Virus record (IMG/VR): IMGVR_UViG_3300036944_001324
Location: 186,001-250,000 of that record
Direction: 5' to 3' (one strand)
Length of the DNA: 64,000 nt
The position numbers and the translations under genes were made by a program. The notes beneath the pieces were generated by a model. It did not search any database. It saw only the letters and a program-made list of their open reading frames with translations, and had not been told where the DNA came from. Shown here in pieces: positions 2,483 through 62,122 of the stretch; positions within the stretch are counted from its first letter, which is position 1; every line of letters begins with the position of its first letter.

Positions 2483-4660
2483 ATGGCTGCCTCTATCAAG
2501 CTGACTGTAGCGTCCCACCACTACAAAGTCGAGCCACGAACTCAGGAAGCAAAGGAAATGCTTTTTGAGTTCACTCGCCGTTTCTTGAAAGTGGACTTTC
2601 AAGGTAACGTTAGATCTATTACCACGTTCGCGGCTGCTAACAAATCGCGGTCGTGGTTCAGATTTCACATCAACAGTCTCACTGAGTTTTACATGTTTGC
2701 GAGAAATCGCAACTACCTGAAAGAACAGATGGAGATTGTGGTTCGGCCTTACATCGAACTAGCCAAGGTCGACCTTCCTGTAAAAGAACACTGGGAGGTT
2801 CGTGTTGATCAAGTACCGATTGTCGACTACCTGACCAAACCCATCGCTGTTGACGAACCCAAAGCCAAGCTAGTGGGACTTCAGACAGGCGGCGGTAAAG
2901 CGATACCGAACGATACGCTCGTTAAAACACCTGATGGTTGGGTGGCTAACAAGGACCTCAAGGTAGGTGATACCATCGTTGCATGGGACGGCACGCACTC
3001 CAAAGTCACTGGTTTGTTCCCTCAGGGTCTGGTTGAAGTCTGCACTATGCGCTTTGACGATGGGCGAGAGCGCGTGTGCTCTTGGGATCACCTCTGGCGC
3101 GTTTACGTTAGCGAGTGTCCTATTCCTCAGGTATTGACGTCCAGGCAAATGGAAAGCCTTCTCTACAGCGGTAAAGGCCTGCGCATCGACTTGCACCTTG
3201 CCGCTACAGAAGAAGACAAAGCCGCTTTCGCAGAAGCCATCAAGGGTAAAGAAGACCCTCACTTGAGCTATCGTTATACCTTGAGACCCAAGTCTCAAGA
3301 AGAGCTGGAACGTCTGACCAAACTAGCCTGGGCTTGTGGCGCCAGAGCTAGCAGTGTCAAGCTTACTGACGAGAAGTTCTTGCTCTACGTTTTCACGAAC
3401 GATGACAGCTTCGCAGCCCGGACTATGTCTGTTGTTGCGATACGCCGCGGTGGTGGATCTAGGGAGATGCAGTGTATCTCCATCGATCATCCTGATCGAC
3501 TCTTCATCATCGAAGACTACATCGTCACTCACAACACGTTCACCGCCATCAAGTCGATCAGTGACATCGGGCACAAAGTAGCTGTCGTGCTCAAGCCAAA
3601 GTACATCGATAAATGGGTGGATGACTTCACCGATGAAACCAAGGGTATTTTGGACATCAGTGAAAAAGAGATCATGACGATCCAAGGTAGCGCAGAGCTC
3701 ATGGCTCTGACTAAACTGGTCGAGATCCCTGGGGCTTTGGACAAGTACAAGATCTTCATCTTCTCTAACCGAACGTTCGACAACTACCTCAAAGCTTACG
3801 AGTTGCTGGGCTCTGACATCACCGCCATGGGTTACATGGTCGAGCCTGACTACCTGTTCGAGCGCATGGGTGTGGGTATTCGCTTGATTGATGAGGTGCA
3901 TGAAGAGTTTCACGCCAACTTCCGGCAGGACTTGTACACACACGTTCACATGTCGATCAGCTTGTCTGCAACGCTGATATCGCGTGATCCTACGCTGATG
4001 CGGATGTATGAGACGGCTTATCCACAGGCAACGCGTTACAAAGCACCGCCTTTGGAGAGGTACACAACGAGTTACGGGGTGTATTACAACTCCAATCCGA
4101 ACTACCGCTTGAAAACTTCCGAGCGAGGTCAGTCCTCCTACAGCCACACGGCTTACGAGAGCTGTATCATGAACAATAAAACGTTCATGAAAGGCTACGG
4201 TGATATGATCAAACACTACCTTGATAAAGGGTTTGTTCAGAACTATGAACCTGGGCACAAAGCTATCGTGTTTGCGGCGACCATCGACATGTGTACCCGG
4301 CTTAAGGATCACTTGTCGGATGCTTACCCGCAGTTCTCTGTGCGGCGCTTTGTAACAGGCGATGATTACCATGCTGACTACCAAGCTCCCGATATTCGTG
4401 TAACGACAATCGGCAAGGGTGGTACGGGTTTGGACATCAAGAACCTCACAGATGCACACATGACTAACGCCTTGGATTCCATTCAGCAAAACATCCAAGC
4501 GTTCGGTCGTCTTCGCAACCTCCTTCCCAAAGAGACAAGGTTCTTTTGGTATACCAATCGACGTGTCCCTAAACACGTCAAGTACCATGCGAAGAAGATG
4601 CAATTGATGAAGGAAAGAGCGCTTAGCGTGTCCAACATCGACTACATGCCACAACTATAG
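2483..4660 (+). CDS. SF2 (DExH-box) DNA/RNA helicase, intein-containing; phiKZ gp75-like
   Basis: Walker A QTGGGK|T split by an intein; motif II LIDEVHE; motif III SLSAT; motif VI QAFGRLR. Position upstream of the RNAP beta' gene matches phiKZ-like synteny as I recall it. Confidence 0.9.
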   Translation: MAASIKLTVASHHYKVEPRTQEAKEMLFEFTRRFLKVDFQGNVRSITTFAAANKSRSWFRFHINSLTEFYMFARNRNYLKEQMEIVVRPYIELAKVDLPVKEHWEVRVDQVPIVDYLTKPIAVDEPKAKLVGLQTGGGKAIPNDTLVKTPDGWVANKDLKVGDTIVAWDGTHSKVTGLFPQGLVEVCTMRFDDGRERVCSWDHLWRVYVSECPIPQVLTSRQMESLLYSGKGLRIDLHLAATEEDKAAFAEAIKGKEDPHLSYRYTLRPKSQEELERLTKLAWACGARASSVKLTDEKFLLYVFTNDDSFAARTMSVVAIRRGGGSREMQCISIDHPDRLFIIEDYIVTHNTFTAIKSISDIGHKVAVVLKPKYIDKWVDDFTDETKGILDISEKEIMTIQGSAELMALTKLVEIPGALDKYKIFIFSNRTFDNYLKAYELLGSDITAMGYMVEPDYLFERMGVGIRLIDEVHEEFHANFRQDLYTHVHMSISLSATLISRDPTLMRMYETAYPQATRYKAPPLERYTTSYGVYYNSNPNYRLKTSERGQSSYSHTAYESCIMNNKTFMKGYGDMIKHYLDKGFVQNYEPGHKAIVFAATIDMCTRLKDHLSDAYPQFSVRRFVTGDDYHADYQAPDIRVTTIGKGGTGLDIKNLTDAHMTNALDSIQQNIQAFGRLRNLLPKETRFFWYTNRRVPKHVKYHAKKMQLMKERALSVSNIDYMPQL
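2900..3535 (+). mobile_element. class 3 intein (212 aa) with a degenerate homing-endonuclease remnant
   Basis: Starts AIPNDTLVKTPDGW (Ala1). Block B HLW, block F MQCISID, block G IVTHN followed by +1 Thr give the Trp-Cys-Thr triplet of class 3 inteins. Confidence 0.9.
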
Positions 4661-4717
4661 CACCACAATGCTTCTGTAAGGCATTTTAAGGGCCCTAGAA
4701 GGCCCTAAAATAACATA

Positions 4718-4790
4718 CGGCATAAATGCCCCACCCTATCAACCAAAGGCCCTTAAAAAGGCTTCTGGCGATAGGGTGGGGTATATGCTG
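4718..4790. terminator. bidirectional hairpin between convergent genes
   Basis: gccccaccctatc ... gatagggtggggt, flanked by cggcataaa and tatgctg. Confidence 0.7.
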
Positions 4791-4797
4791 TCTGTTT

Positions 4798-5262
4798 TTA
4801 TTTTGGTCTCGGTAGCTGGATACTGAGGCCATTCTTTCCAAGACCGGCATTTCTCAAGCTGGTTTGCTCATCTTGGAACCGCTCGATCTTTCGAGCTTCA
4901 CTGATCACCAACATGAACTCTCGCATCTCTCGGGGGAGATTCAAGAATTGTTCGACGCTAAGACCAGGATAGAACTCAGCCATGGAACTCTTGGTGTAGA
5001 GATCCAGGGCTGCAAAGAGTGGACCATTTCGACCGTACTCTTCCAGAGGACTCACCGCAATAGAAGACAACGGACGCATGACCATCGCGTTGCCTGCAGT
5101 CTGTAGACCGTAGTAAAGGTCAAAAAGCATATCCACAGCCACTCTCGTGGAATCTTCGTCATCGAACTTGGGCAGAGTGCGAAACGCATGTTCTACGAAA
5201 GCGTAGTCATCGATCGTTTTGCCATCTGCCTTGTACCGGATGCCAAAGTTGGGAGCGGCCAC
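4798..5262 (-). CDS. tail assembly chaperone-like downstream ORF (T4 gp51/lambda T-like); probably expressed as a -1 frameshift extension of 5271..6860
   Basis: C-terminal SVEQFLNLPREMREFML resembles chaperone T-type tails. GTG start has a weak RBS, and the frame is open back to a slippery site at 5316-5322. Confidence 0.6.
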   Translation of the reverse strand: MAAPNFGIRYKADGKTIDDYAFVEHAFRTLPKFDDEDSTRVAVDMLFDLYYGLQTAGNAMVMRPLSSIAVSPLEEYGRNGPLFAALDLYTKSSMAEFYPGLSVEQFLNLPREMREFMLVISEARKIERFQDEQTSLRNAGLGKNGLSIQLPRPK

Positions 5263-16355: not shown

Positions 16356-16360
16356 AGTGT

Positions 16361-16431
16361 AAAGGTCCTGTTCGAGAGAGCAGGACCTTTATGCCGCCTA
16401 AACGGCATAAAAGCAGGCCGTAGCCTGCCTT
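16361..16431. terminator. back-to-back hairpins terminating convergent genes
   Basis: aaaggtcctg/caggaccttt, then ttatgccg...cggcataa, then gcaggc/gcctgc. Confidence 0.7.
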
Positions 16432-40496: not shown

Positions 40497-40565
40497 CCTA
40501 AAGCAATCAGGAGAGGCTATCTGCGGCCTCTCCTTTTATGCCGACTACAAAGAAAGGCTAACGCC

Positions 40566-52723: not shown

Positions 52724-52732
52724 GACAGCACT

Positions 52733-53680
52733 GTGTTCATTCTCAGTGGAAGGCAACGCATCTTTGTCTCGATAGCGGCTTATCGAGATAGTGAAGCGCC
52801 TGCCACGGTACGTGATTTACTGGAGAAGGCCGACAGACCTCATCTGGTCAAGATCGGCATTCTCAATCAGATTTGTCCCAAAGAAGACATCCGCTGCAAA
52901 GTAGGTGGCTGGACAAATGTTCAAGAGCGTATCGTTGACTACACGGAGTCCAAAGGAGCGTGCTGGGCACGCTCCTACATATGGACGAATCTCCTTGAAG
53001 ACGAAGACTTCGTTCTTCAGATAGACAGCCATAGTCGCTTTGACCATGGCTGGGACACAACGCTGCTTAAAACTTTCGAGAAGCTTCAAGACGCTTCAGC
53101 GGTACTTACCCATTACCCGATGCGGTACGACCCCTTGACGAACGTTAAGAGCGCTCAGATGTACACTCGCTTTGACATCCAGAGTTTCAACCAATACGGG
53201 TTCCCTGTTATTAGCTCGGCGGCGTTGGCACTGAAAGACGCACCGGTAACACCTGCTAAAACAGCTTTCATAGCTGGTGGTTGTTTGTTCACACGGGCAA
53301 GAACCATCAAGAACGTTCCGTACGATCCCCATCTATACTTCCAAGGTGAGGAGATCAACTACGCAATCCGGTTGTGGACACATGGTCACAACCTGTACTT
53401 GCCTAACAAGCCCTTCATGTACCATGACTACGGTAATGGTCGTGCAAGGCGTATGCATTGGCAGGATGTACAGCGATGGAAGCAGATGAACGATCTGTCC
53501 ATCATGCGAAACAAGCATGTTCTTGATCTTGGTATTGCTACTGACCCAGCTTCGTTGATTGATATCGACAAGTACAGTCTTGGTAAACACCGCACCCTGT
53601 CAGATTGGGAGCGATTCTCTGGCGTCTATTTGAGAGCCCAGACCTTGACTGAAAAAGCCAAGACTGGTTCATTCCAGTGA
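52733..53680 (+). CDS. GT60/Gnt1-like alpha-GlcNAc transferase (Pfam 'GlcNAc' family)
   Basis: IFVSIAAYRD.E, GACWAR, LQIDSHSRF (DxH), FIAGGCLF, YDP.LYF.GEEI...RLWTHG. Confidence 0.85.
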   Translation: MFILSGRQRIFVSIAAYRDSEAPATVRDLLEKADRPHLVKIGILNQICPKEDIRCKVGGWTNVQERIVDYTESKGACWARSYIWTNLLEDEDFVLQIDSHSRFDHGWDTTLLKTFEKLQDASAVLTHYPMRYDPLTNVKSAQMYTRFDIQSFNQYGFPVISSAALALKDAPVTPAKTAFIAGGCLFTRARTIKNVPYDPHLYFQGEEINYAIRLWTHGHNLYLPNKPFMYHDYGNGRARRMHWQDVQRWKQMNDLSIMRNKHVLDLGIATDPASLIDIDKYSLGKHRTLSDWERFSGVYLRAQTLTEKAKTGSFQ

Positions 53681-55983: not shown

Positions 55984-56057
55984 CATTCATTCATCATAAA
56001 AGGCAAGGGTTCATTCCCTTGCCTTATGTCGTTTAATCTACCATCGAAAGAATTACC

Positions 56058-57768: not shown

Positions 57769-57846
57769 AAGCAGAAAATCATTCATCATTACTTACGCAT
57801 GCAATTGTTTCAATTGCATGCGTTTATAATCAACGTAAAGAAAATC

Positions 57847-58500
57847 ATGGCACAAATTCGCATGTCTCCTGAAAATGTTAAACGTGTTCTAGCTACGGCC
57901 AAACTCGCCACGCATTGCCGATTGAGTAATGACCCGATGTGGTACAAAATCGTTTCTGTGGATGACAAAGTTCACGGTGACATCCATCTGGCTCATCCTC
58001 TTGATCCCTCCAACCAAGCCACAAACATAATTTACGTGAAGATGAACACAGACCCGTCTCAGATCCTCTTTTGCAACATTGCAGAAGTTCCTCTGGTTGG
58101 TCCAGCACTTACACCAGCGCAAGAGCTTTTCCAAAAGCTCTTCGATCTCAAACAAGAGATGTTGGGAATTACCAAAAGCATTTCATCCATTAAACACCTC
58201 GACAAAGAGTCTTACAAAGAGTGCCTTTTTGGGATGTACCAGGCGTTGGCTGTGCCAACTAAGCGGATTGGTGTTACCGATAACAAGGCAGCCTACGACT
58301 GGTTTGTTTCTCAGGGTTGTTCTCTAACCACCACCGCTGTGGCCATTGCTTTGTGTGATGAAATCTATTCACACTGGCGAGCCATGGTTACAAAGACAAT
58401 GCTATTCCAAGTAAAACAATCTGGTTACGACGATTGGGAACGTCGATTCAAGCTGATAGACCTCATTATGGAAGATCTGAATAAGCCTCACACAGCATAA
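57847..58500 (+). CDS. hypothetical protein, tandem paralog of 58555..59208
   Basis: SP..VKRVLATAK.ATHC...W.KIVSVD...W..RFKLIDLIMEDL.K shared over the full length. Confidence 0.8.
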   Translation: MAQIRMSPENVKRVLATAKLATHCRLSNDPMWYKIVSVDDKVHGDIHLAHPLDPSNQATNIIYVKMNTDPSQILFCNIAEVPLVGPALTPAQELFQKLFDLKQEMLGITKSISSIKHLDKESYKECLFGMYQALAVPTKRIGVTDNKAAYDWFVSQGCSLTTTAVAIALCDEIYSHWRAMVTKTMLFQVKQSGYDDWERRFKLIDLIMEDLNKPHTA

Positions 58501-58554
58501 GAGCAGAGGGCGCAACGCCCTCTGCTTTACTGCGCAACTTATCCAAATAAAGTC

Positions 58555-59208
58555 ATGAATCAAACTGCCATCTCCCCCAAAGACGTAAAGCGTGTGCTGG
58601 CTACTGCTAAAGTAGCGACCCATTGCAAACCGGCCAACACTACTGTCTGGAACAAGATCGTTAGTGTTGATGAAGAGGACTACTTCATCTACCTTGCTGA
58701 CCCACTCGATCGGTCGAATCAAATCACTTCGTCTATTGAAGTGCGTTTGTTGTATGGTCCAGACCAGTTGGTGTTTGCAAACATTCAAGAAGTTGAATTA
58801 GTGACCCCGGACACCAAGCCCGGCGAAGTGTTGCTTTTTCAATTGCATGAAATCAAACGTGATATGAGCGCCATCATTACCAACGTGACTCGTTTCGATA
58901 AAGTGAAGCGCAAAGATTACCACGAATGTATTGATCGCTTGTACTACGCGTTGATGTCGACGGTAAAGGTCGGTGTTTTTGAGAAAGAGACTTACAGCTG
59001 GTTTCGAAGTCAGCGTTGCTCTTTCACGACTGCAAGTCTGGCTGTCTTGCTTTATAAAGAGACGAACACTCACCGAAATACGCTCTATAACAAGAACGTG
59101 AGCAATTACTCACTGCAGGAAGGGTTCAGCAACTGGGGCCGCTGGTTCAAGTTGATCGACCTAATCATGGAAGACTTGAAAAAGGCTTTCCCACTCACAC
59201 AACTGTAA
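58555..59208 (+). CDS. hypothetical protein, tandem paralog of 57847..58500
   Basis: Same shared motifs as 57847..58500. Confidence 0.8.
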   Translation: MNQTAISPKDVKRVLATAKVATHCKPANTTVWNKIVSVDEEDYFIYLADPLDRSNQITSSIEVRLLYGPDQLVFANIQEVELVTPDTKPGEVLLFQLHEIKRDMSAIITNVTRFDKVKRKDYHECIDRLYYALMSTVKVGVFEKETYSWFRSQRCSFTTASLAVLLYKETNTHRNTLYNKNVSNYSLQEGFSNWGRWFKLIDLIMEDLKKAFPLTQL

Positions 59209-59269
59209 GCATAAAAGCAAGGGGCGTAAAGCTCCTTGCTATGCCGTTAATCCATCGAAAGACTGTCAA

Positions 59270-59818
59270 ATGAAAATACCTGGACTCAAACACTACCAGT
59301 TCGACCCTGAGGTCGTCTGTGCGTATTACTTCTCGGCAGCCGCTCACGCTTCCGTCAAGCAAAAGCGCAACTACACAGGCGAGCCTTACATCGTCCATCC
59401 AGCCGGCGTGCTGGAGATACTGATGCAGGCATGCCCTGACAAGGTCACTAACGCGGTCGCTAAGGCCGCTTTGTTGCACGATACAACAGAAGATACCGGG
59501 GTGACTCCTGAATTGATTCTGCAGCTGTTTGGTCAACAGGTGCATGGTTTCGTGAAGTACCTGAGCAAGGCTACTACTTCCAGCTTCGGCAATCGTGCCG
59601 AACGCCAAGCTGTTGAAGTGGCACGTATGCATAAGGCGCCTGAAGAAGTGCAGAACGTCAAAGCCTCTGACCTCATCCACAACCGCCGCAGTATTGCGCT
59701 GCATGATCCAGGCTTCTTGCAAGTGTTCGACTACGAAGCTCACCAGTTGTTTGCTGCTATGCAGTTGGTGGATCGACGCTTGGTTGCACTGTGGGAGAAG
59801 GAAACATCCACCGAATAA
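59270..59818 (+). CDS. HD-domain small alarmone hydrolase-like protein (RelA/SpoT/Mesh1 family)
   Basis: AH..Q.R.YTGEPYI.HP, AALLHDT.EDT, VK.SD..HN. Confidence 0.88.
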   Translation: MKIPGLKHYQFDPEVVCAYYFSAAAHASVKQKRNYTGEPYIVHPAGVLEILMQACPDKVTNAVAKAALLHDTTEDTGVTPELILQLFGQQVHGFVKYLSKATTSSFGNRAERQAVEVARMHKAPEEVQNVKASDLIHNRRSIALHDPGFLQVFDYEAHQLFAAMQLVDRRLVALWEKETSTE

Positions 59819-59833
59819 CGGAGATACAAAACA

Positions 59834-60574
59834 ATGACTCATTCCCTCAAAGTACGTTGGGCTATTGCTGCGGCTATCGCTAAGGCGACTCACATTCGCA
59901 TAGACGACCAAAAGGAGTTGCGCATTACAAGCAACAGTTCCGACGGCACGAGCGTTACTGTCCAAGACCCCAATTACCCGGACAAGATCATCAAGATCGA
60001 TCTGGATAATCGCAGTCTTGACAGTCTGAAGTTCTGGACTATGACTCCTGTCGTCATTCCTAATAACGAGCCGCTGGTGGCCTACTACGAGCTCCTATGT
60101 TTTAATCTGGCCGTCGGGTTCTCCGACAAGCAAGGTATCGTGGAGCTTAAGGAATCTGTGTTTCAGGTTTGGGAAGACGACATCGAACTGCGCGGCATGC
60201 CCAAGAACGGTGCCAAGATACAGATGGCTTATCACGGCTTACCAGACAGTGTCTACTCCGCCAGCCACCAGATGCGCGACATCTTGGATGATCCCAACTT
60301 CTTGAAGCACAACCAAGCCTACGTGCTGACCATCTGCGTGTTCACAGTAGCCCGTGCATTGCGTGAGCTGCTGCGTAACAAGGGCTTTAATCTTTCCAAC
60401 CTCCATCCCGAGATGCCGCTCATCCTGGACATCCCCGCCGATTGGGAAGCCTGTCGCATCCACAACCTGTGGTGTGGGATCTCTGGTGCTGAGGAGAAAG
60501 TGGTCGAACGTGGTCAACTGTTCGAATCCAAAATGGAAAAAGTCGTGGAGGGGGTTGGGGGGAGGACTCTCTAA
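59834..60574 (+). CDS. hypothetical protein; N-terminus related to the 57847/58555 module
   Basis: AKATHIRI...RI......V.V.DP. Confidence 0.65.
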   Translation: MTHSLKVRWAIAAAIAKATHIRIDDQKELRITSNSSDGTSVTVQDPNYPDKIIKIDLDNRSLDSLKFWTMTPVVIPNNEPLVAYYELLCFNLAVGFSDKQGIVELKESVFQVWEDDIELRGMPKNGAKIQMAYHGLPDSVYSASHQMRDILDDPNFLKHNQAYVLTICVFTVARALRELLRNKGFNLSNLHPEMPLILDIPADWEACRIHNLWCGISGAEEKVVERGQLFESKMEKVVEGVGGRTL

Positions 60575-61328
60575 CGCTTCGCTAGTAACTGTCGCTTTTA
60601 CGTTACCACGTAAAAGCTCTTTCAATCTCTTAGATTTCTAATTGAGTTATGAACGTTAGTTCATGATTCTCTTAGGAACTTTGAGGTATCTACTCAGGGG
60701 TTCCTATACCCCTGAGAGTTCGTATAAGGCCTTATAAAGCCGACATAAAAGCAGGAGGGTACACTGACCCTCCTGCTGTAGGTAATAACGCCTTATACGA
60801 GCTTTACAGTAGAGACTCGTAGACGAAGTCTACAGTCTCATATCCAGCATGGACAAAAATGTCCATGCTCTCTTTATATCTTATGCGCAAGTCGTCGAGC
60901 TTTTTCGGCGACTGAGAGAGTACACGGAACATGGACAGCCCGCAGGGATGGACAGTGGAGAGTACGAACGAAGGAGCATACCAGGGAGAGAGCGTAAGCG
61001 ATCACACTGAGATACTTCGCCGGGTAGCTACGTATCTCAGATAAGGGGCGTTAGCCCCTTTTTTATTCTTATTCTTATTCTCCATATGATTGTTTACTTA
61101 GTAAACCTAATTAGACATTCGGTGGAGAATAATATCTATCCAGCGTTGGAGAGCTTATAAACGCTGTTACAATGACCCTTGTTTACAAGAGAATGACTAT
61201 TGGATCGACATTAAGTCGACAGATCGAGCAGGTGTGCTACGTTACACCTGCGCTGTAACCCTAGCCTAAGAGCTTGGAGAGCAGTAGATCAAAAAAGTTC
61301 TTATGTTCAACAAACGAGAGAGTCAAAC
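60575..61328. other. ORF-free, hairpin-dense non-coding region (structured RNA or DNA cis-element)
   Basis: At least 12 inverted repeats of 5-14 bp in about 750 bp, with a terminator-like hairpin plus T-tract at 61043-61064. Confidence 0.7.
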
Positions 61329-62003
61329 ATGACAAACAACCAACACGCCAACGCTGAGAAGATTGAAGTTCAAATTCAAGGTATTTATTTCATAGCGGGC
61401 TTGATCAAAGATCAGTGCCAGAAGCTGTACATGCAAGACCCTCAGGTGTTCTTGGATGACATGCCCACTACGTTCAGCGTATTGGATCTCCTGCAGACCG
61501 CTATGGATTCAGTGAGTAACAACCTGGATAGGTACTTCGGTCCTTATGCGGCGTTTAACGAGCCTCAGCTGACTGATATCGTTTTGGAAACAACTGAAGC
61601 GGTTAACCGCTGCCGCGCTGCGTTCATTGTGGACGAATACCCTGTGGACATGCTGGAGTACCGTGAAACGATGTTGTACAAGCTGCCGCACGTGTACGCT
61701 GGTTTGATAGGGTATGCTGAGCAGCTCAAGTACATGCTCGAAGCTGGTAAGGATCGGGGTCGTATTAGTCCTCGCAGTGTTTCTCGTGTAGTGTTCGATT
61801 TTTATCTGGATGCTATCTTCGAGAAGATCAAGACCAACACCCATGTGTTCATGCATGGTCGTTGGTGGAAGATTGAGAAGTGCGAGATCGATCCTACCGA
61901 TCGTAGCTTGTTTGAGTTGCATCTGGACTTCGATCCTTTGAAGAAGGTTGTGAGTTCTGCTCATAGCTTGCCTTTGATCTATAAGGCTGCTTTCAAGCGT
62001 TAA
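61329..62003 (+). CDS. hypothetical protein with a C-terminal shared beta module
   Basis: NTHVF..GRWWKIEKCE...LHL.FDP. Confidence 0.7.
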   Translation: MTNNQHANAEKIEVQIQGIYFIAGLIKDQCQKLYMQDPQVFLDDMPTTFSVLDLLQTAMDSVSNNLDRYFGPYAAFNEPQLTDIVLETTEAVNRCRAAFIVDEYPVDMLEYRETMLYKLPHVYAGLIGYAEQLKYMLEAGKDRGRISPRSVSRVVFDFYLDAIFEKIKTNTHVFMHGRWWKIEKCEIDPTDRSLFELHLDFDPLKKVVSSAHSLPLIYKAAFKR

Positions 62004-62009
62004 ACTGGT

Positions 62010-62050
62010 AGCCCTAGGGAGTTGGCGCTCCCTAGGGCTTTTATGCCGTC
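62010..62050 (+). terminator. hairpin followed by TTATGCCG
   Basis: agccctagggag/ctccctagggct stem. Confidence 0.75.
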
Positions 62051-62122
62051 TACGGGGCTTTTAGAGGCCTTGTAGGTATGTATGTGAGTGTTATTTTTAA
62101 ATTGTAAAAAGGAAATGAAATC

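What the first reader, a model, noticed from the sequence alone, without database searches (positions are those of the whole stretch)
60575..61328. 750-bp ORF-free region packed with nested hairpins: candidate large structured RNA or replication/packaging element
Seen: in a genome otherwise almost fully coding, this gap holds at least 12 inverted repeats. They include 60594-60617 (perfect 10 bp), 60649-60664, 60693-60716, the 14-bp palindrome 60723-60736, 60750-60777, 60812-60839, 60846-60869, 60890-60913, 61007-61040, 61043-61060 plus T-tract, 61141-61166 and 61228-61251. A long-range 14-bp helix (60717-60730 with 60790-60803) encloses another hairpin. Two stems contain G-T pairs only on the + strand, favouring a + strand RNA ending at the 61043-61064 terminator. 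However, several loops are c-GAA-g, c-GTTA-g or c-GTAA-g (and GCGAAGC on the minus strand at 60576-60582), the extra-stable DNA mini-hairpin type known from ssDNA origins and N4 promoters. A purine-rich stretch (about 60915-61000) repeats GAGAGTAC and ATGGACAG. Function is inferred either way.
Basis: partly seen in the sequence, partly recalled or inferred. Interest (0 to 1): 0.75.

Follow-up and report, generated by a model that had tools for sequence, protein, structure and literature searches.

The report
New large structured RNA in jumbo phages
The largest gene-free gap of this 272-kb phiKZ-like jumbo phage most likely encodes a roughly 520-600-nt, hairpin-rich non-coding RNA that matches no known RNA family; related uncultured phages keep it even where the neighbouring proteins have diverged almost beyond recognition, and its function is unknown.

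Summary
Window 60575-61328 is the largest ORF-free gap of a 271,654-bp phiKZ-like jumbo phage genome, and it contains the genome's most strongly folded stretch. RNAfold z is -14.2 on the + strand and -8.9 on the - strand.

The conserved unit is 60543-61065, with a conserved extension to about 61140. It starts inside the last 10 codons of the upstream ORF. Positions 61141-61328 are variable spacer.

Rfam, tRNA/tmRNA, isolated-phage and IMG/VR searches found nothing. I recovered homologues from Logan, JGI and NCBI metagenome contigs.
- A close group is 94-99% identical.
- A deep lineage (L023-L026) has flanking proteins only 16-25% identical. Its element still shares 68-78% identity, with perfect blocks of 16-21 nt. 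Its middle hairpins have entirely different sequences but the same hairpin layout.

Evidence for a + strand RNA:
- Compensatory pair changes: 8 pairs, reached by 0 of 500 shuffles.
- G·U-only substitutions.
- An 11:1 excess of G·T over A·C mismatches in the repeat arms.
- An intrinsic terminator at 61043-61064.

There is no GC-skew signal for an origin, and the internal 53-codon ORF is broken in one lineage.

Best reading: a new family of large structured phage non-coding RNA. A trans-acting role is inferred, not shown. Transcription is supported only weakly, by one lake metatranscriptome.

The parts
60543..61065 (+). Core of the conserved structured RNA element, about 523 nt.
   Evidence: Conservation begins at TCGTGGAGGGGG in every relative, whatever gene lies upstream. 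Homologues are L001-L011 and L023-L026.
60554..60575 (+). P0, a 5' G-rich hairpin with an AGGA loop. It has 9 pairs, 4 of them G·U. It overlaps the stop codon (60572-60574) of ORF 59834-60574.
   Evidence: RNAalifold. A G·U pair becomes A-U in three relatives. The deep lineage keeps 8 of 9 pairs, with G-C changed to G·U. This hairpin can pair only on the + strand.
60576..60583 (+). P1, 5' strand of the closing helix. It pairs with 60991-60999 and encloses a multi-branch domain of about 420 nt.
   Evidence: Both strands are sequence-identical in the deep lineage except for the bulged base. There is therefore no covariation to test this helix. An alternative local GNRA-capped hairpin is possible.
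60594..60617 (+). H1, a perfect 10-bp hairpin.
   Evidence: I5. The stem is identical in all lineages, while the loop varies (UACC, UACU, AUGC, AUUC).
60625..60687 (+). H2, a long hairpin with internal loops and a GUUA apical loop.
   Evidence: Four pairs changed on both sides against the deep lineage, with some pairs broken.
60693..60716 (+). H3, a 9-bp hairpin.
   Evidence: I9. In L024 the stem sequence is replaced but all 9 pairs are kept, 4 of them by changes on both sides. The 5' part of the loop (UUCC) is retained.
60717..60803 (+). H4, a 14-bp long-range helix enclosing the inner hairpin 60750-60777.
   Evidence: (I1, I4). The deep lineage has a 12-bp long-range helix of unrelated sequence at the same place. 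Its two variants differ by a C-G to A-U double change.
60740..60777 (-). Read on the - strand, this is a GC hairpin followed by TTTATGTCGG. It matches the genome's recurrent hairpin + TTTATG(C/T)CG unit. It is present only in the close group. In L008 the 6-nt loop is inverted.
   Evidence: It is absent from the deep lineage, so it is not part of the conserved core.
60812..60839 (+). H5, a 6+6-bp hairpin with a GAA loop.
   Evidence: An A-U pair becomes G·U in three relatives. The deep lineage has two different hairpins here, and one extra hairpin just before H6.
60846..60869 (+). H6, a 10-bp hairpin with an A-rich loop.
   Evidence: I7. The inner 7 bp and the loop are identical in the deep lineage.
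60880..60913 (+). A conserved single-stranded block (ATCTTATGCGCA) followed by hairpin H9 (60890-60913, U-rich loop).
   Evidence: 21 of 21 nt and 16 of 16 nt are identical between lineages. A G·U pair becomes A-U in H9.
60914..60990 (+). Purine-rich domain (GAGAGTAC twice, ATGGACAG twice, GAAGGAGCATACCAGG). Its sequence is conserved, but its predicted pairing is not.
   Evidence: D7, D10. Local fold z is only about -0.7. Long-range pairs predicted here are broken in the deep lineage. The GAAGGAGCAT block is shared with L022 and L023.
60991..60999 (+). P1, 3' strand (AGCG-U-AAGC).
   Evidence: The bulged U is G in the deep lineage.
61007..61040 (+). H11, a 9-bp hairpin with a structured apical part.
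   Evidence: I3. In L022 the second pair is C-G where the window has U-A, a compensatory change. L006 keeps the base of the stem with a shortened top.
61043..61064 (+). Intrinsic terminator: a 7-bp GC hairpin followed by T6.
   Evidence: The hairpin is kept in all lineages. The U-tract is weaker in L022 and L023 and absent in L006.
61063..61140 (+). Conserved 3' extension: (TTATTC)x3 at 61063-81080 read as 61063-61080, a small hairpin, and AATAATATCTATC at 61128-61140. It is either part of read-through transcripts or a control region for the downstream gene.
   Evidence: It is invariant in the close group up to about 61120. The deep lineage has (TTAGTC)x3 and the same 13-mer. The 13-mer occurs only once in the window. 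A lake metatranscriptome contig runs to 61120.
61141..61328 (+). Variable spacer before the 224-aa gene, with hairpins at 61146-61166 and 61228-61251. The second hairpin is followed by a decayed version of the TTTATGCCG unit.
   Evidence: It diverges in L001 and L002. L006, L022 and L023 carry an intact hairpin + TTTATGCCG unit at this place.

Best explanation
The gap holds a gene for a previously undescribed, large, highly structured non-coding RNA on the + strand. The core is about 523 nt (60543-61065), and read-through forms may reach about 61140.

**Anatomy.**
- A 5' G-rich hairpin.
- A closing helix that encloses a fan of eight or more hairpins.
- Conserved 5' and 3' parts, with peripheral hairpins whose sequences are free to change.
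- A purine-rich 3' domain that is conserved in sequence but weakly paired.
- A final hairpin, then an intrinsic terminator.

**Likely synthesis (inferred).** No terminator separates the element from the upstream gene. It is probably transcribed with the upstream operon and ends at the terminator at 61043-61064. Its many stable stems would then protect it as a discrete RNA.

**Likely action (inferred, not shown).** It acts in trans as a folded RNA. The invariant hairpins and the exposed purine-rich blocks would offer fixed sequences to a partner. That partner could be a phage or host protein, another RNA, or further copies of itself. This resembles the large ornate phage RNAs GOLLD and ROOL more than a gene-specific regulator.
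For: **Structure beyond chance, and stronger on the + strand.** z is -14.2 (+) against -8.9 (-) in the window. In the deep homologue L023, z is -10.7 for the sense strand against -6.6 for the antisense strand. The element holds the most structured window of the genome.

**Strand-symmetric test.** Mismatches in the inverted-repeat arms are G·T on the + strand 11 times and A·C once.

**Close relatives.** Nine of ten stem substitutions keep pairing through G·U or A-U.

**Deep lineage.**
- Flanking proteins are 16-25% identical.
- The element is 68% identical overall, 73% in the 5' 150 nt and 78% in the 3' domain. It has perfect blocks of 16-21 nt.
- H3, H4 and H5 have unrelated sequences but are still hairpins in the same order.

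**Covariance model.** A model built only from the close group finds the deep lineage at E of about 3e-5. On that alignment 95.4% of cells pair. Eight pairs changed on both sides, which 0 of 500 shuffles reached, and slid controls gave 0-1. Further compensatory changes occur in H11 (L022), H4' and H5b'.

**Independence from neighbouring genes.**
- The gene directly upstream differs between lineages.
- In three lineages a terminator-promoter unit separates the element from the downstream gene.

**Terminator.**

**Not coding.** The internal 53-codon ORF has an in-frame stop at codon 9 in L024 and L026.

**Transcription.** In one true lake metatranscriptome, two 100%-identical contigs (depth about 10) lie only on 60795-60942 and 60971-61120. 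Nothing lies on the 5 kb of flanks.
Against: - Transcription is barely documented. It rests on two 151-nt contigs from one run, with no direction information. One contig runs 55 nt past the terminator.
- The wastewater 'RNA-Seq' runs hold the phage as long DNA-like contigs. They hold the capsid gene equally well, so they say nothing about RNA abundance.
- No promoter or 5' end is identified.
- Within the close group the element (97.9-99.3% identical) is only about three times better conserved than third codon positions of the downstream gene (93-98%).
- Covariation rests on few independent lineages, and the alignment was fitted to the structure. Some stem changes are disruptive.
- The predicted long-range pairs of the 3' domain fail in the deep lineage.
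- No partner is known. The downstream protein has no recognisable fold relative.
- GGA motifs are not significantly enriched.
Confidence: 0.6

Rival explanations
1. A cis-acting RNA: a long structured 3' untranslated region or insulator. It would stabilise the upstream operon's mRNA against 3' exonucleases. Or it would set how much transcription reads through the terminator into the 224-aa gene, which in this lineage has lost its own canonical hairpin + TTTATGCCG unit.
For: - No terminator or recognisable promoter lies between the upstream gene and the element.
- The element ends in a terminator.
- Conservation continues 75 nt past the terminator.
- The element always sits before the 224-aa gene family.
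- The promoter-like unit upstream of that gene is decayed in the window lineage.
Against: - The upstream gene differs between lineages: a 246/226-aa gene in some, a 217-219-aa paralogue in others.
- In L006, L022 and L023 an intact terminator-promoter unit separates the element from the downstream gene.
- Elsewhere in this genome a single hairpin serves as a terminator.
- Sequence blocks 16-21 nt long, conserved across lineages with 16-25% protein identity, go beyond what a stabilising 3' end would need.
Confidence: 0.2
2. A DNA-level element: a replication origin, packaging site or recombination hotspot whose hairpins form in single-stranded or cruciform DNA.
For: - Many perfect 9-11-bp inverted repeats.
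- Loops of the GAA and GTTA type, and GCGAAGC on the - strand.
- An inverted hairpin loop in L008, which is a DNA-level event.
- An AT-rich tract with three hexamer repeats resembling iterons.
- G·T wobble pairs are also tolerated in single-stranded DNA.
Against: - No GC- or AT-skew inflection at the element.
- Strong strand asymmetry of folding in two lineages.
- G-rich hairpin P0 pairs only through G·U.
- The long purine-rich blocks are conserved without any inverted symmetry.
- A canonical + strand terminator closes the unit.
- The element does not lie at the ends of either near-complete assembly, although those ends may be arbitrary.
Confidence: 0.07
3. No single function: an accumulation of this genome's ordinary terminator and promoter hairpins, together with remnants of a lost gene.
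For: - The genome carries about 60 hairpin + TTTATG(C/T)CG units.
- One such unit sits inside the element on the - strand (60740-77), and a decayed one lies at 61228-61265.
- A 217-219-aa paralogue present upstream of the element in relatives is missing in the window.
- Peripheral hairpins differ in number between lineages.
Against: - Only one of more than twelve hairpins matches the unit.
- The order of hairpins and the long non-palindromic blocks are kept across lineages whose proteins are 16-25% identical.
- Stems show compensatory changes.
- No translated remnant of a gene was seen. The only shared ORF is broken in L024.
Confidence: 0.08
4. A small protein gene: the 53-codon ORF 60849-61010, or the 37-codon ORF 60931-61044.
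For: The first 23 codons of the 53-codon ORF are similar in the window and in L025 (MDKNVH..SYAQVVELFRRL). Two of the differences among the lineages are synonymous.
Against: - In-frame stop at codon 9 in L024 and L026.
- No Shine-Dalgarno sequence precedes the ATG, and the ATG lies inside the H6 stem.
- The C-terminal halves are unrelated and differ in length.
- The conservation is explained by H6, H9 and the block between them.
Confidence: 0.02

Closest known systems
GOLLD and ROOL, large ornate RNAs of phages and prophages (function unknown; RNA-only nanocages by cryo-EM, PMC12286853)
   Same: - Phage-encoded and 0.5-0.8 kb long.
- Many helices radiating from multi-way junctions.
- Function unknown.
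[quoted passage not shown]
   Different: - No match to the Rfam models, even at E up to 10, in either lineage.
- Not next to tRNA genes; the whole genome has none.
- The hairpins are unusually regular perfect stems, and no pseudoknot or kissing loop has been shown.
- Oligomerisation is untested.
- The host is a phiKZ-like jumbo phage clade.
Small RNAs of phiKZ-like phages found by ONT-cappable-seq (201phi2-1 sRNA005 and the phiKZ gp182 leader; PMC11512511)
   Same: They are non-coding RNAs of phiKZ-like jumbo phages, conserved between genera by position.
   Different: - Those RNAs are under 250 nt, and eight of the eleven in 201phi2-1 arise from premature termination in 5' untranslated regions.
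- This element is 0.5-0.6 kb, lies at the 3' end of an operon, and has no sequence match in any isolated phage.
Protein-sponge RNAs of the CsrB/RsmZ type
   Same: A multi-hairpin RNA ending in a terminator, with a purine-rich part that contains several GGA and AAGGAG motifs.
   Different: GGA is not significantly enriched (P about 0.1-0.15), and most copies are not in hairpin loops. This is a resemblance only.
Single-stranded-DNA origin hairpins and phage N4 hairpin promoters
   Same: GC-closed mini-hairpin loops (GAA, GTTA) and a GCGAAGC motif on the - strand.
   Different: - The phage uses multisubunit phiKZ-type RNA polymerases.
- There is no skew signal.
- The motif lies within a predicted long-range helix that is conserved in sequence.

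Membership tests
GOLLD / ROOL / OLE / raiA and every other Rfam 15 family (including group I and II introns, RNase P, tmRNA, 6S, HEARO) | A match to the family covariance model at its gathering score. | tested here: not met
   There were no gathering-score hits in the 64-kb window. At E up to 10, only chance-level hits of 19 bits or less against thresholds of 39.9-80 appeared in 60400-61500. The deep homologue gave one such hit. No weak hit is shared by the two lineages.
GOLLD / ROOL | Frequent (not obligatory) location beside tRNA islands of phages. | tested here: not met
   ARAGORN finds no tRNA or tmRNA in the window or in the whole genome.
GOLLD / ROOL | Homo-oligomeric RNA-only assembly through kissing loops and A-minor contacts. 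| not testable with these tools
   There are only leads. A self-complementary UGCGCA lies in a conserved single-stranded block. The A-rich H6 loop and the U-rich H9 loop are complementary and are conserved in both lineages.
Structured non-coding RNA (generic) | Folding energy beyond shuffled controls, stronger on one strand. | tested here: met
Structured non-coding RNA (generic) | Base pairs kept by compensatory changes in homologues. | tested here: met
   Eight pairs changed on both sides, reached by 0 of 500 shuffles, and slid controls gave 0-1. The evidence rests on few lineages and on an alignment fitted to the model.
Structured non-coding RNA (generic) | A discrete transcript. | tested here: inconclusive
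   One lake metatranscriptome covers only the element. The other 'RNA' runs carry phage DNA.
Intrinsic (Rho-independent) terminator | A GC-rich hairpin followed directly by a U-tract. | tested here: met
   61043-61060 followed by T6. The form is the same as many other terminators in this genome.
CsrA/RsmA sponge RNA | Many GGA motifs, mostly in hairpin loops. | tested here: not met
   There are 13 GGA against 9.0 +/- 2.7 expected (P = 0.10). The deep lineage gives P of about 0.14-0.15. Few copies are in loops.
Replication origin / packaging site | A strand-composition switch or genome terminus at the site. | tested here: not met
   Cumulative GC and AT skew pass through 246.5 kb without inflection. 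The element is internal in two near-complete assemblies. Read-end analysis was not possible.
This genome's hairpin + TTTATG(C/T)CG units (terminator/promoter-like, TATG type) | A GC hairpin followed at once by T-rich TTATG(C/T)CG. | tested here: met
   This is met only for the inner hairpin of H4 read on the - strand (60777 to 60740). It is not met for the other hairpins.

The most novel reading that the evidence does not exclude
This is the founding member of a new class of large ornate RNA specific to a clade of phiKZ-like jumbo phages. The class is comparable in size and complexity to ROOL and GOLLD. It would work as an autonomous RNA machine or assembly: a self-assembling scaffold, a decoy for a host RNA-binding or defence factor, or a ribozyme.
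Probability: 0.3. Interest if true: 0.85.

Novelty: new variant of a known kind. Interest (0 to 1): 0.66.

Why it matters
Large structured RNAs of unknown function are rare, and several have turned out to do unexpected things. For example, ROOL and GOLLD form RNA-only cages. None of this size has been described for phiKZ-like jumbo phages in the papers consulted.

In this clade the RNA is kept better than its neighbouring proteins, which implies a function that depends on both its fold and its exact sequence.

The phages appear to be common in wastewater and also occur in a lake and in biofilters. More sequences for covariation analysis, and RNA for in-vitro structure work, should therefore be obtainable without a cultured host.

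Tried and rejected
- **Rfam.** Gathering and E-value modes on both lineages gave nothing.
- **tRNA/tmRNA.** None found.
- **Isolated phages.** BLAST of the element, of the deep homologue and of a neighbouring protein found no match.
- **IMG/VR.** Flanking proteins and three DNA patterns found nothing. The genome-contig scan also found nothing.
- **Relatives.** The genome search does not draw relatives for a virus record.
- **GC/AT skew.** No inflection for an origin.
- **Repeated motifs.** Motifs of the 3' extension were tested as a possible genome-wide promoter. They are unique to this locus.
- **CsrA-sponge idea.** GGA is not significantly enriched.
- **Downstream 224-aa protein.**
  - The AlphaFold model has pLDDT 85: a helical bundle plus a small sheet.
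  - Foldseek found no match at E of 0.001 or better in the PDB or viral libraries.
  - The Atlas search gave no lead.
- **RNA abundance.**
  - The element is present in 20-60-Mb 'RNA-Seq' libraries, which first suggested high abundance.
  - Laid contigs span the flanks, so they look like DNA.
  - The capsid gene is held just as well.
- **'Ultraconserved' within the close group.** The downstream gene is nearly as conserved there, so I withdrew this claim.
- **Long-range pairing of the purine-rich domain.** The pairs P7 and P8, and a pairing with the hexamer repeats, were tested. They are broken or unsupported in the deep lineage.
- **TTATGCG as an internal promoter.** This variant is not a recurrent hairpin-linked unit in the genome.
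- **53-codon ORF.** Broken in L024.
Full report
**Where the window lies.** The window is bases 186001-250000 of a single-contig virus record of 271,654 bp with 51% G+C. The genome encodes a phiKZ-type multisubunit RNA polymerase beta subunit (phrog_3148), a large terminase and a major head protein. The head protein's best match among isolated phages is only 41% identical (Burkholderia phage FLC9), followed by Ralstonia, Xanthomonas, Erwinia and Pseudomonas jumbo phages. It is therefore an uncultured, deeply branching phiKZ-like jumbo phage. It has no tRNA genes at all.

**Checking the observation.**
- 60575-61328 is ORF-free apart from a few ORFs of at most 53 codons.
- It is the largest such gap in the genome.
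- All but one of the listed inverted repeats are there; within 61141-61166 the tools recover a 6-bp stem at 61146-61151/61161-61166. The long-range helix, the 14-bp palindrome and the two 8-nt direct repeats are also present.
- Folded as RNA, 60575-61070 reaches -214 kcal/mol, against -136 +/- 5.6 for dinucleotide shuffles. That is z = -14.2 on the + strand and z = -8.9 on the - strand.
- In 150-nt windows the excess structure switches on at about 60550 and off at about 61200. The flanking genes sit near z = 0.
- In a composition-corrected scan of all 200-nt windows of the genome, the element holds the top-ranked window and also the third.
- Among 14 ORF-free gaps it is the extreme, at z = -11.7. 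The next gaps score -8.2 and -6.8.

**Known families.** Rfam 15 gives nothing at gathering scores. It gives only chance-level hits at E up to 10, both for the window and for the deep homologue, and the two share no hit. The element has no similarity to any isolated phage genome or to IMG/VR. It has no second copy in its own genome.

**Relatives.**
- The upstream and downstream proteins have homologues in Logan, ENA and NCBI assemblies.
- The contigs behind them give seven distinct close versions of the locus: L001-L005, L007-L009 and L011.
- Two more distant contigs, L006 and L022, hold only the last 100-150 nt of the element.
- A pattern conserved between the window and L022 then found a full-length, strongly diverged copy in a JGI/NCBI metagenome contig (L023). 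Its protein neighbour led to two further contigs, L024 and L026.

**Boundaries.** Conservation starts at TCGTGGAGGGGG (60543) in every relative.
- In the window this lies inside the last ten codons of ORF 59834-60574.
- In L003 and L004 that ORF ends earlier.
- In L005, L007, L008, L011 and the deep lineage a different gene precedes the element. It is a 209-219-aa paralogue of window gene 58555-59208.
- On the 3' side the close group is essentially invariant to about 61120 and diverges after about 61190.
- The deep lineage still shares a triple hexamer repeat and the 13-mer AATAATATCTATC (61128-61140).
- The ancestral arrangement is [217-aa family gene] - [element] - [224-aa family gene].

**How conserved it is.** Within the close group the element is 97.9-99.3% identical. 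At first this looked extreme beside the upstream genes: the HD gene is 85-97% identical, and the 246-aa protein is 65-89% identical. However, the downstream gene is 95.6-99.0% identical, with third codon positions at 93-98%. So in that comparison the element evolves only about three times more slowly than near-neutral sites.

The telling comparison is with the deep lineage.
- Its flanking proteins are 16-25% identical to those of the window.
- The element is nevertheless 68% identical overall, 73% over the first 150 nt and 78% over the 3' domain.
- It has uninterrupted identical blocks of 16-21 nt.

**Structure and its conservation.** RNAalifold on the close group gives the following layout.
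- P0: a 5' G-rich hairpin held largely by G·U pairs.
- P1: a closing helix, 60576-60583 with 60991-60999.
- H1-H6 and H9: a fan of hairpins inside P1.
- A purine-rich domain.
- H11: a final hairpin.
- A terminator.

Of ten stem substitutions among close relatives, nine keep the pair by switching between G·U and A-U or G-C on the + strand, and one breaks a pair. A test that does not depend on the folding program gives the same direction. In ungapped inverted-repeat arms, the mismatches are G·T on the + strand eleven times and A·C once.

The deep lineage folds equally well, with z = -10.7 for the sense strand and -6.6 for the antisense strand. It shows the same succession of hairpins.
- H1, H6, H9, H11 and the terminator hairpin are kept in sequence. 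Their changes fall in loops or are G·U to A-U switches.
- H2-H5 are rebuilt from different sequences, and there are two extra hairpins.

A covariance model built from the close group alone (H1-H3) finds the deep copies at E of about 3e-5. For L024 it aligns H3 with all nine pairs intact, four of them changed on both sides. On that alignment:
- 95.4% of cells pair.
- Eight pairs carry double changes.
- No shuffle out of 500 reaches this.
- Slid controls give 0-1.

The caveat is that the alignment was fitted to the model. Further compensatory changes are U-A to C-G in H11 of L022, and C-G to A-U (H4') and U-A to A-U (H5b') between the two deep variants.

Against this, a few stem changes are disruptive. 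The long-range pairs predicted inside the purine-rich domain are not kept. That domain is therefore conserved as sequence, not as secondary structure.

**Coding potential.** The 53-codon ORF 60849-61010 shares its first 23 codons with L025. In L024 and L026 it has a stop at codon 9. It has no ribosome-binding site, and its ATG lies inside the H6 stem. The conservation is that of H6, H9 and the block between them.

**Transcription context.** This genome has about 60 copies of a unit made of a GC hairpin followed immediately by TTTATG(C/T)CG(TCT). The unit is strongly enriched upstream of genes. By analogy with the TATG-type promoters of phiKZ-like phages, I read it as a terminator fused to a promoter. 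That analogy is from my own knowledge; PMC11512511 describes the three promoter classes but does not give this motif.
- No + strand copy lies between window 40536 and 62041.
- Nothing resembling a terminator separates the upstream gene from the element. I therefore infer co-transcription with the upstream operon and termination at 61043-61064.
- In L006, L022 and L023 an intact unit lies between the element and the downstream gene. There the element is not that gene's leader.
- In the window lineage this unit has decayed.
- The inner hairpin of H4, read on the - strand, is itself a good copy of the unit (60777 to 60740). It is absent from the deep lineage, so it is an addition to the periphery, not part of the core.

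**Expression data.** Many wastewater runs labelled RNA-Seq hold the element. When laid on the window, however, they give contigs of 7-34 kb that span the flanking genes, which is DNA-like. A control search with the capsid gene finds the same kind of libraries, including very small ones. These runs show that the phages are common in wastewater and nothing more.

One true lake metatranscriptome has two contigs, 100% identical to the window, at depth about 10. They cover 60795-60942 and 60971-61120 only, with nothing on 5 kb of flanks at an 80% identity threshold. This fits an RNA that outlasts its neighbouring mRNAs and sometimes reads through the terminator. It is thin evidence without strand information.

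**DNA-level readings.** Cumulative GC and AT skew show no turn at 246.5 kb. The element is internal in both near-complete assemblies. The asymmetries described above are not expected of a duplex or cruciform signal. The inverted loop of the 60750-60777 hairpin in L008 is a DNA-level event, but such loop flips happen at any long inverted repeat.

**Function.** Nothing in the neighbourhood helps.
- The flanking genes are an HD-domain phosphohydrolase and proteins of unknown function.
- The constant downstream protein models confidently as a helical bundle with a small sheet. It has no fold relative.
- A CsrA-sponge reading is not supported.

Four points favour an RNA that works as a folded molecule in its own right over a gene-specific regulator.
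- It is independent of the identity of the upstream gene.
- In three lineages it is separated from the downstream gene by a terminator-promoter unit.
- It has invariant single-stranded blocks.
- Its stems are protective and its periphery is free to vary.

I put this reading at 0.6. Of its parts, 'functional + strand structured RNA' is well supported and 'acts in trans' is inferred. The main rival is a cis-acting 3' end or read-through controller (0.2).

**Comparison and novelty.** The closest known kind is the group of large ornate phage RNAs, GOLLD and ROOL (PMC12286853). They share the size, the phage origin, the many-helix architecture and, for GOLLD, a conserved 3' part with a variable 5' part. 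Membership is excluded by the covariance models, and there is no tRNA neighbourhood. The sRNAs known from phiKZ-like phages are under 250 nt, and most are 5' leader fragments (PMC11512511). I therefore class this as a new family within a known kind. It is of clear interest to RNA biologists, but direct transcript evidence and a function are still missing.

Noticed in passing
whole genome; e.g. window 62014-62053, 40510-40550, 16360-16420, 56000-56035: About 60 copies of a unit made of a GC-rich hairpin followed directly by TTTATG(C/T)CG(TCT). They occur on both strands and are strongly enriched upstream of genes. They are probably fused terminator-promoter signals of this phage's own RNA polymerase (TATG type).
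   Followed up: partly
L008:4430-4450 against window 60761-60766: The 6-nt loop of the 11-bp hairpin 60750-60777 is ACACTG in the window and its reverse complement CAGTGT in L008 and L009. This is a clean loop inversion between otherwise identical stems.
   Followed up: no
window 52724-53119, 1967-2482, 4601-4900; genome 127098-127483 and 60501-60800: Other ORF-free or intergenic stretches fold better than shuffles, with gap z-scores from -5.4 to -8.2 and scan scores from about -4 to -6. Some may be back-to-back terminators, and others may be further RNAs.
   Followed up: no
window 57799-59208; L008:814-2175 and 3548-4207; L024:3830-5154: A family of paralogous proteins of about 209-233 aa and unknown function surrounds the element. 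The copy directly upstream of the element in most relatives (25-28% identical to window 58555-59208) is missing in the window, L001, L003 and L004.
   Followed up: partly
whole genome: ARAGORN finds no tRNA or tmRNA gene in a 272-kb jumbo phage genome.
   Followed up: yes
window 60543-60574: The last ten codons of ORF 59834-60574 (VEGVGGRTL-stop) are the conserved 5' block of the RNA element. In L003 and L004 the orthologous ORF stops earlier (226 aa), so this tail looks like read-in rather than conserved protein sequence.
   Followed up: partly
window 61063-61080; L023 and L022 equivalents: The triple hexamer repeat (TTATTC)x3 is (TTAGTC)x3 in the deep lineages. The same base changed in all three copies. 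A 5-nt complement occurs twice in each lineage's purine-rich domain (GAGTA in the window, GACTG in the deep lineage), but these copies are not at homologous positions, so this may be chance.
   Followed up: partly
window 62004-62122 against L004, L007, L008: Relatives carry an extra 389-469-aa gene between the 224-aa gene and the 403-aa gene. The window lacks it.
   Followed up: no
window 59195-59965 (- strand): A 215-256-codon ORF on the - strand overlaps the + strand HD-domain gene (59270-59818), which has the Pfam HD_4 match. The - strand ORF is probably spurious.
   Followed up: no
public runs: This phage group turns up in many wastewater libraries from several studies. It also occurs in biofilter and lake samples and in one run labelled with an organism name (coded 'organism A'), which may point to the host.
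   Followed up: no
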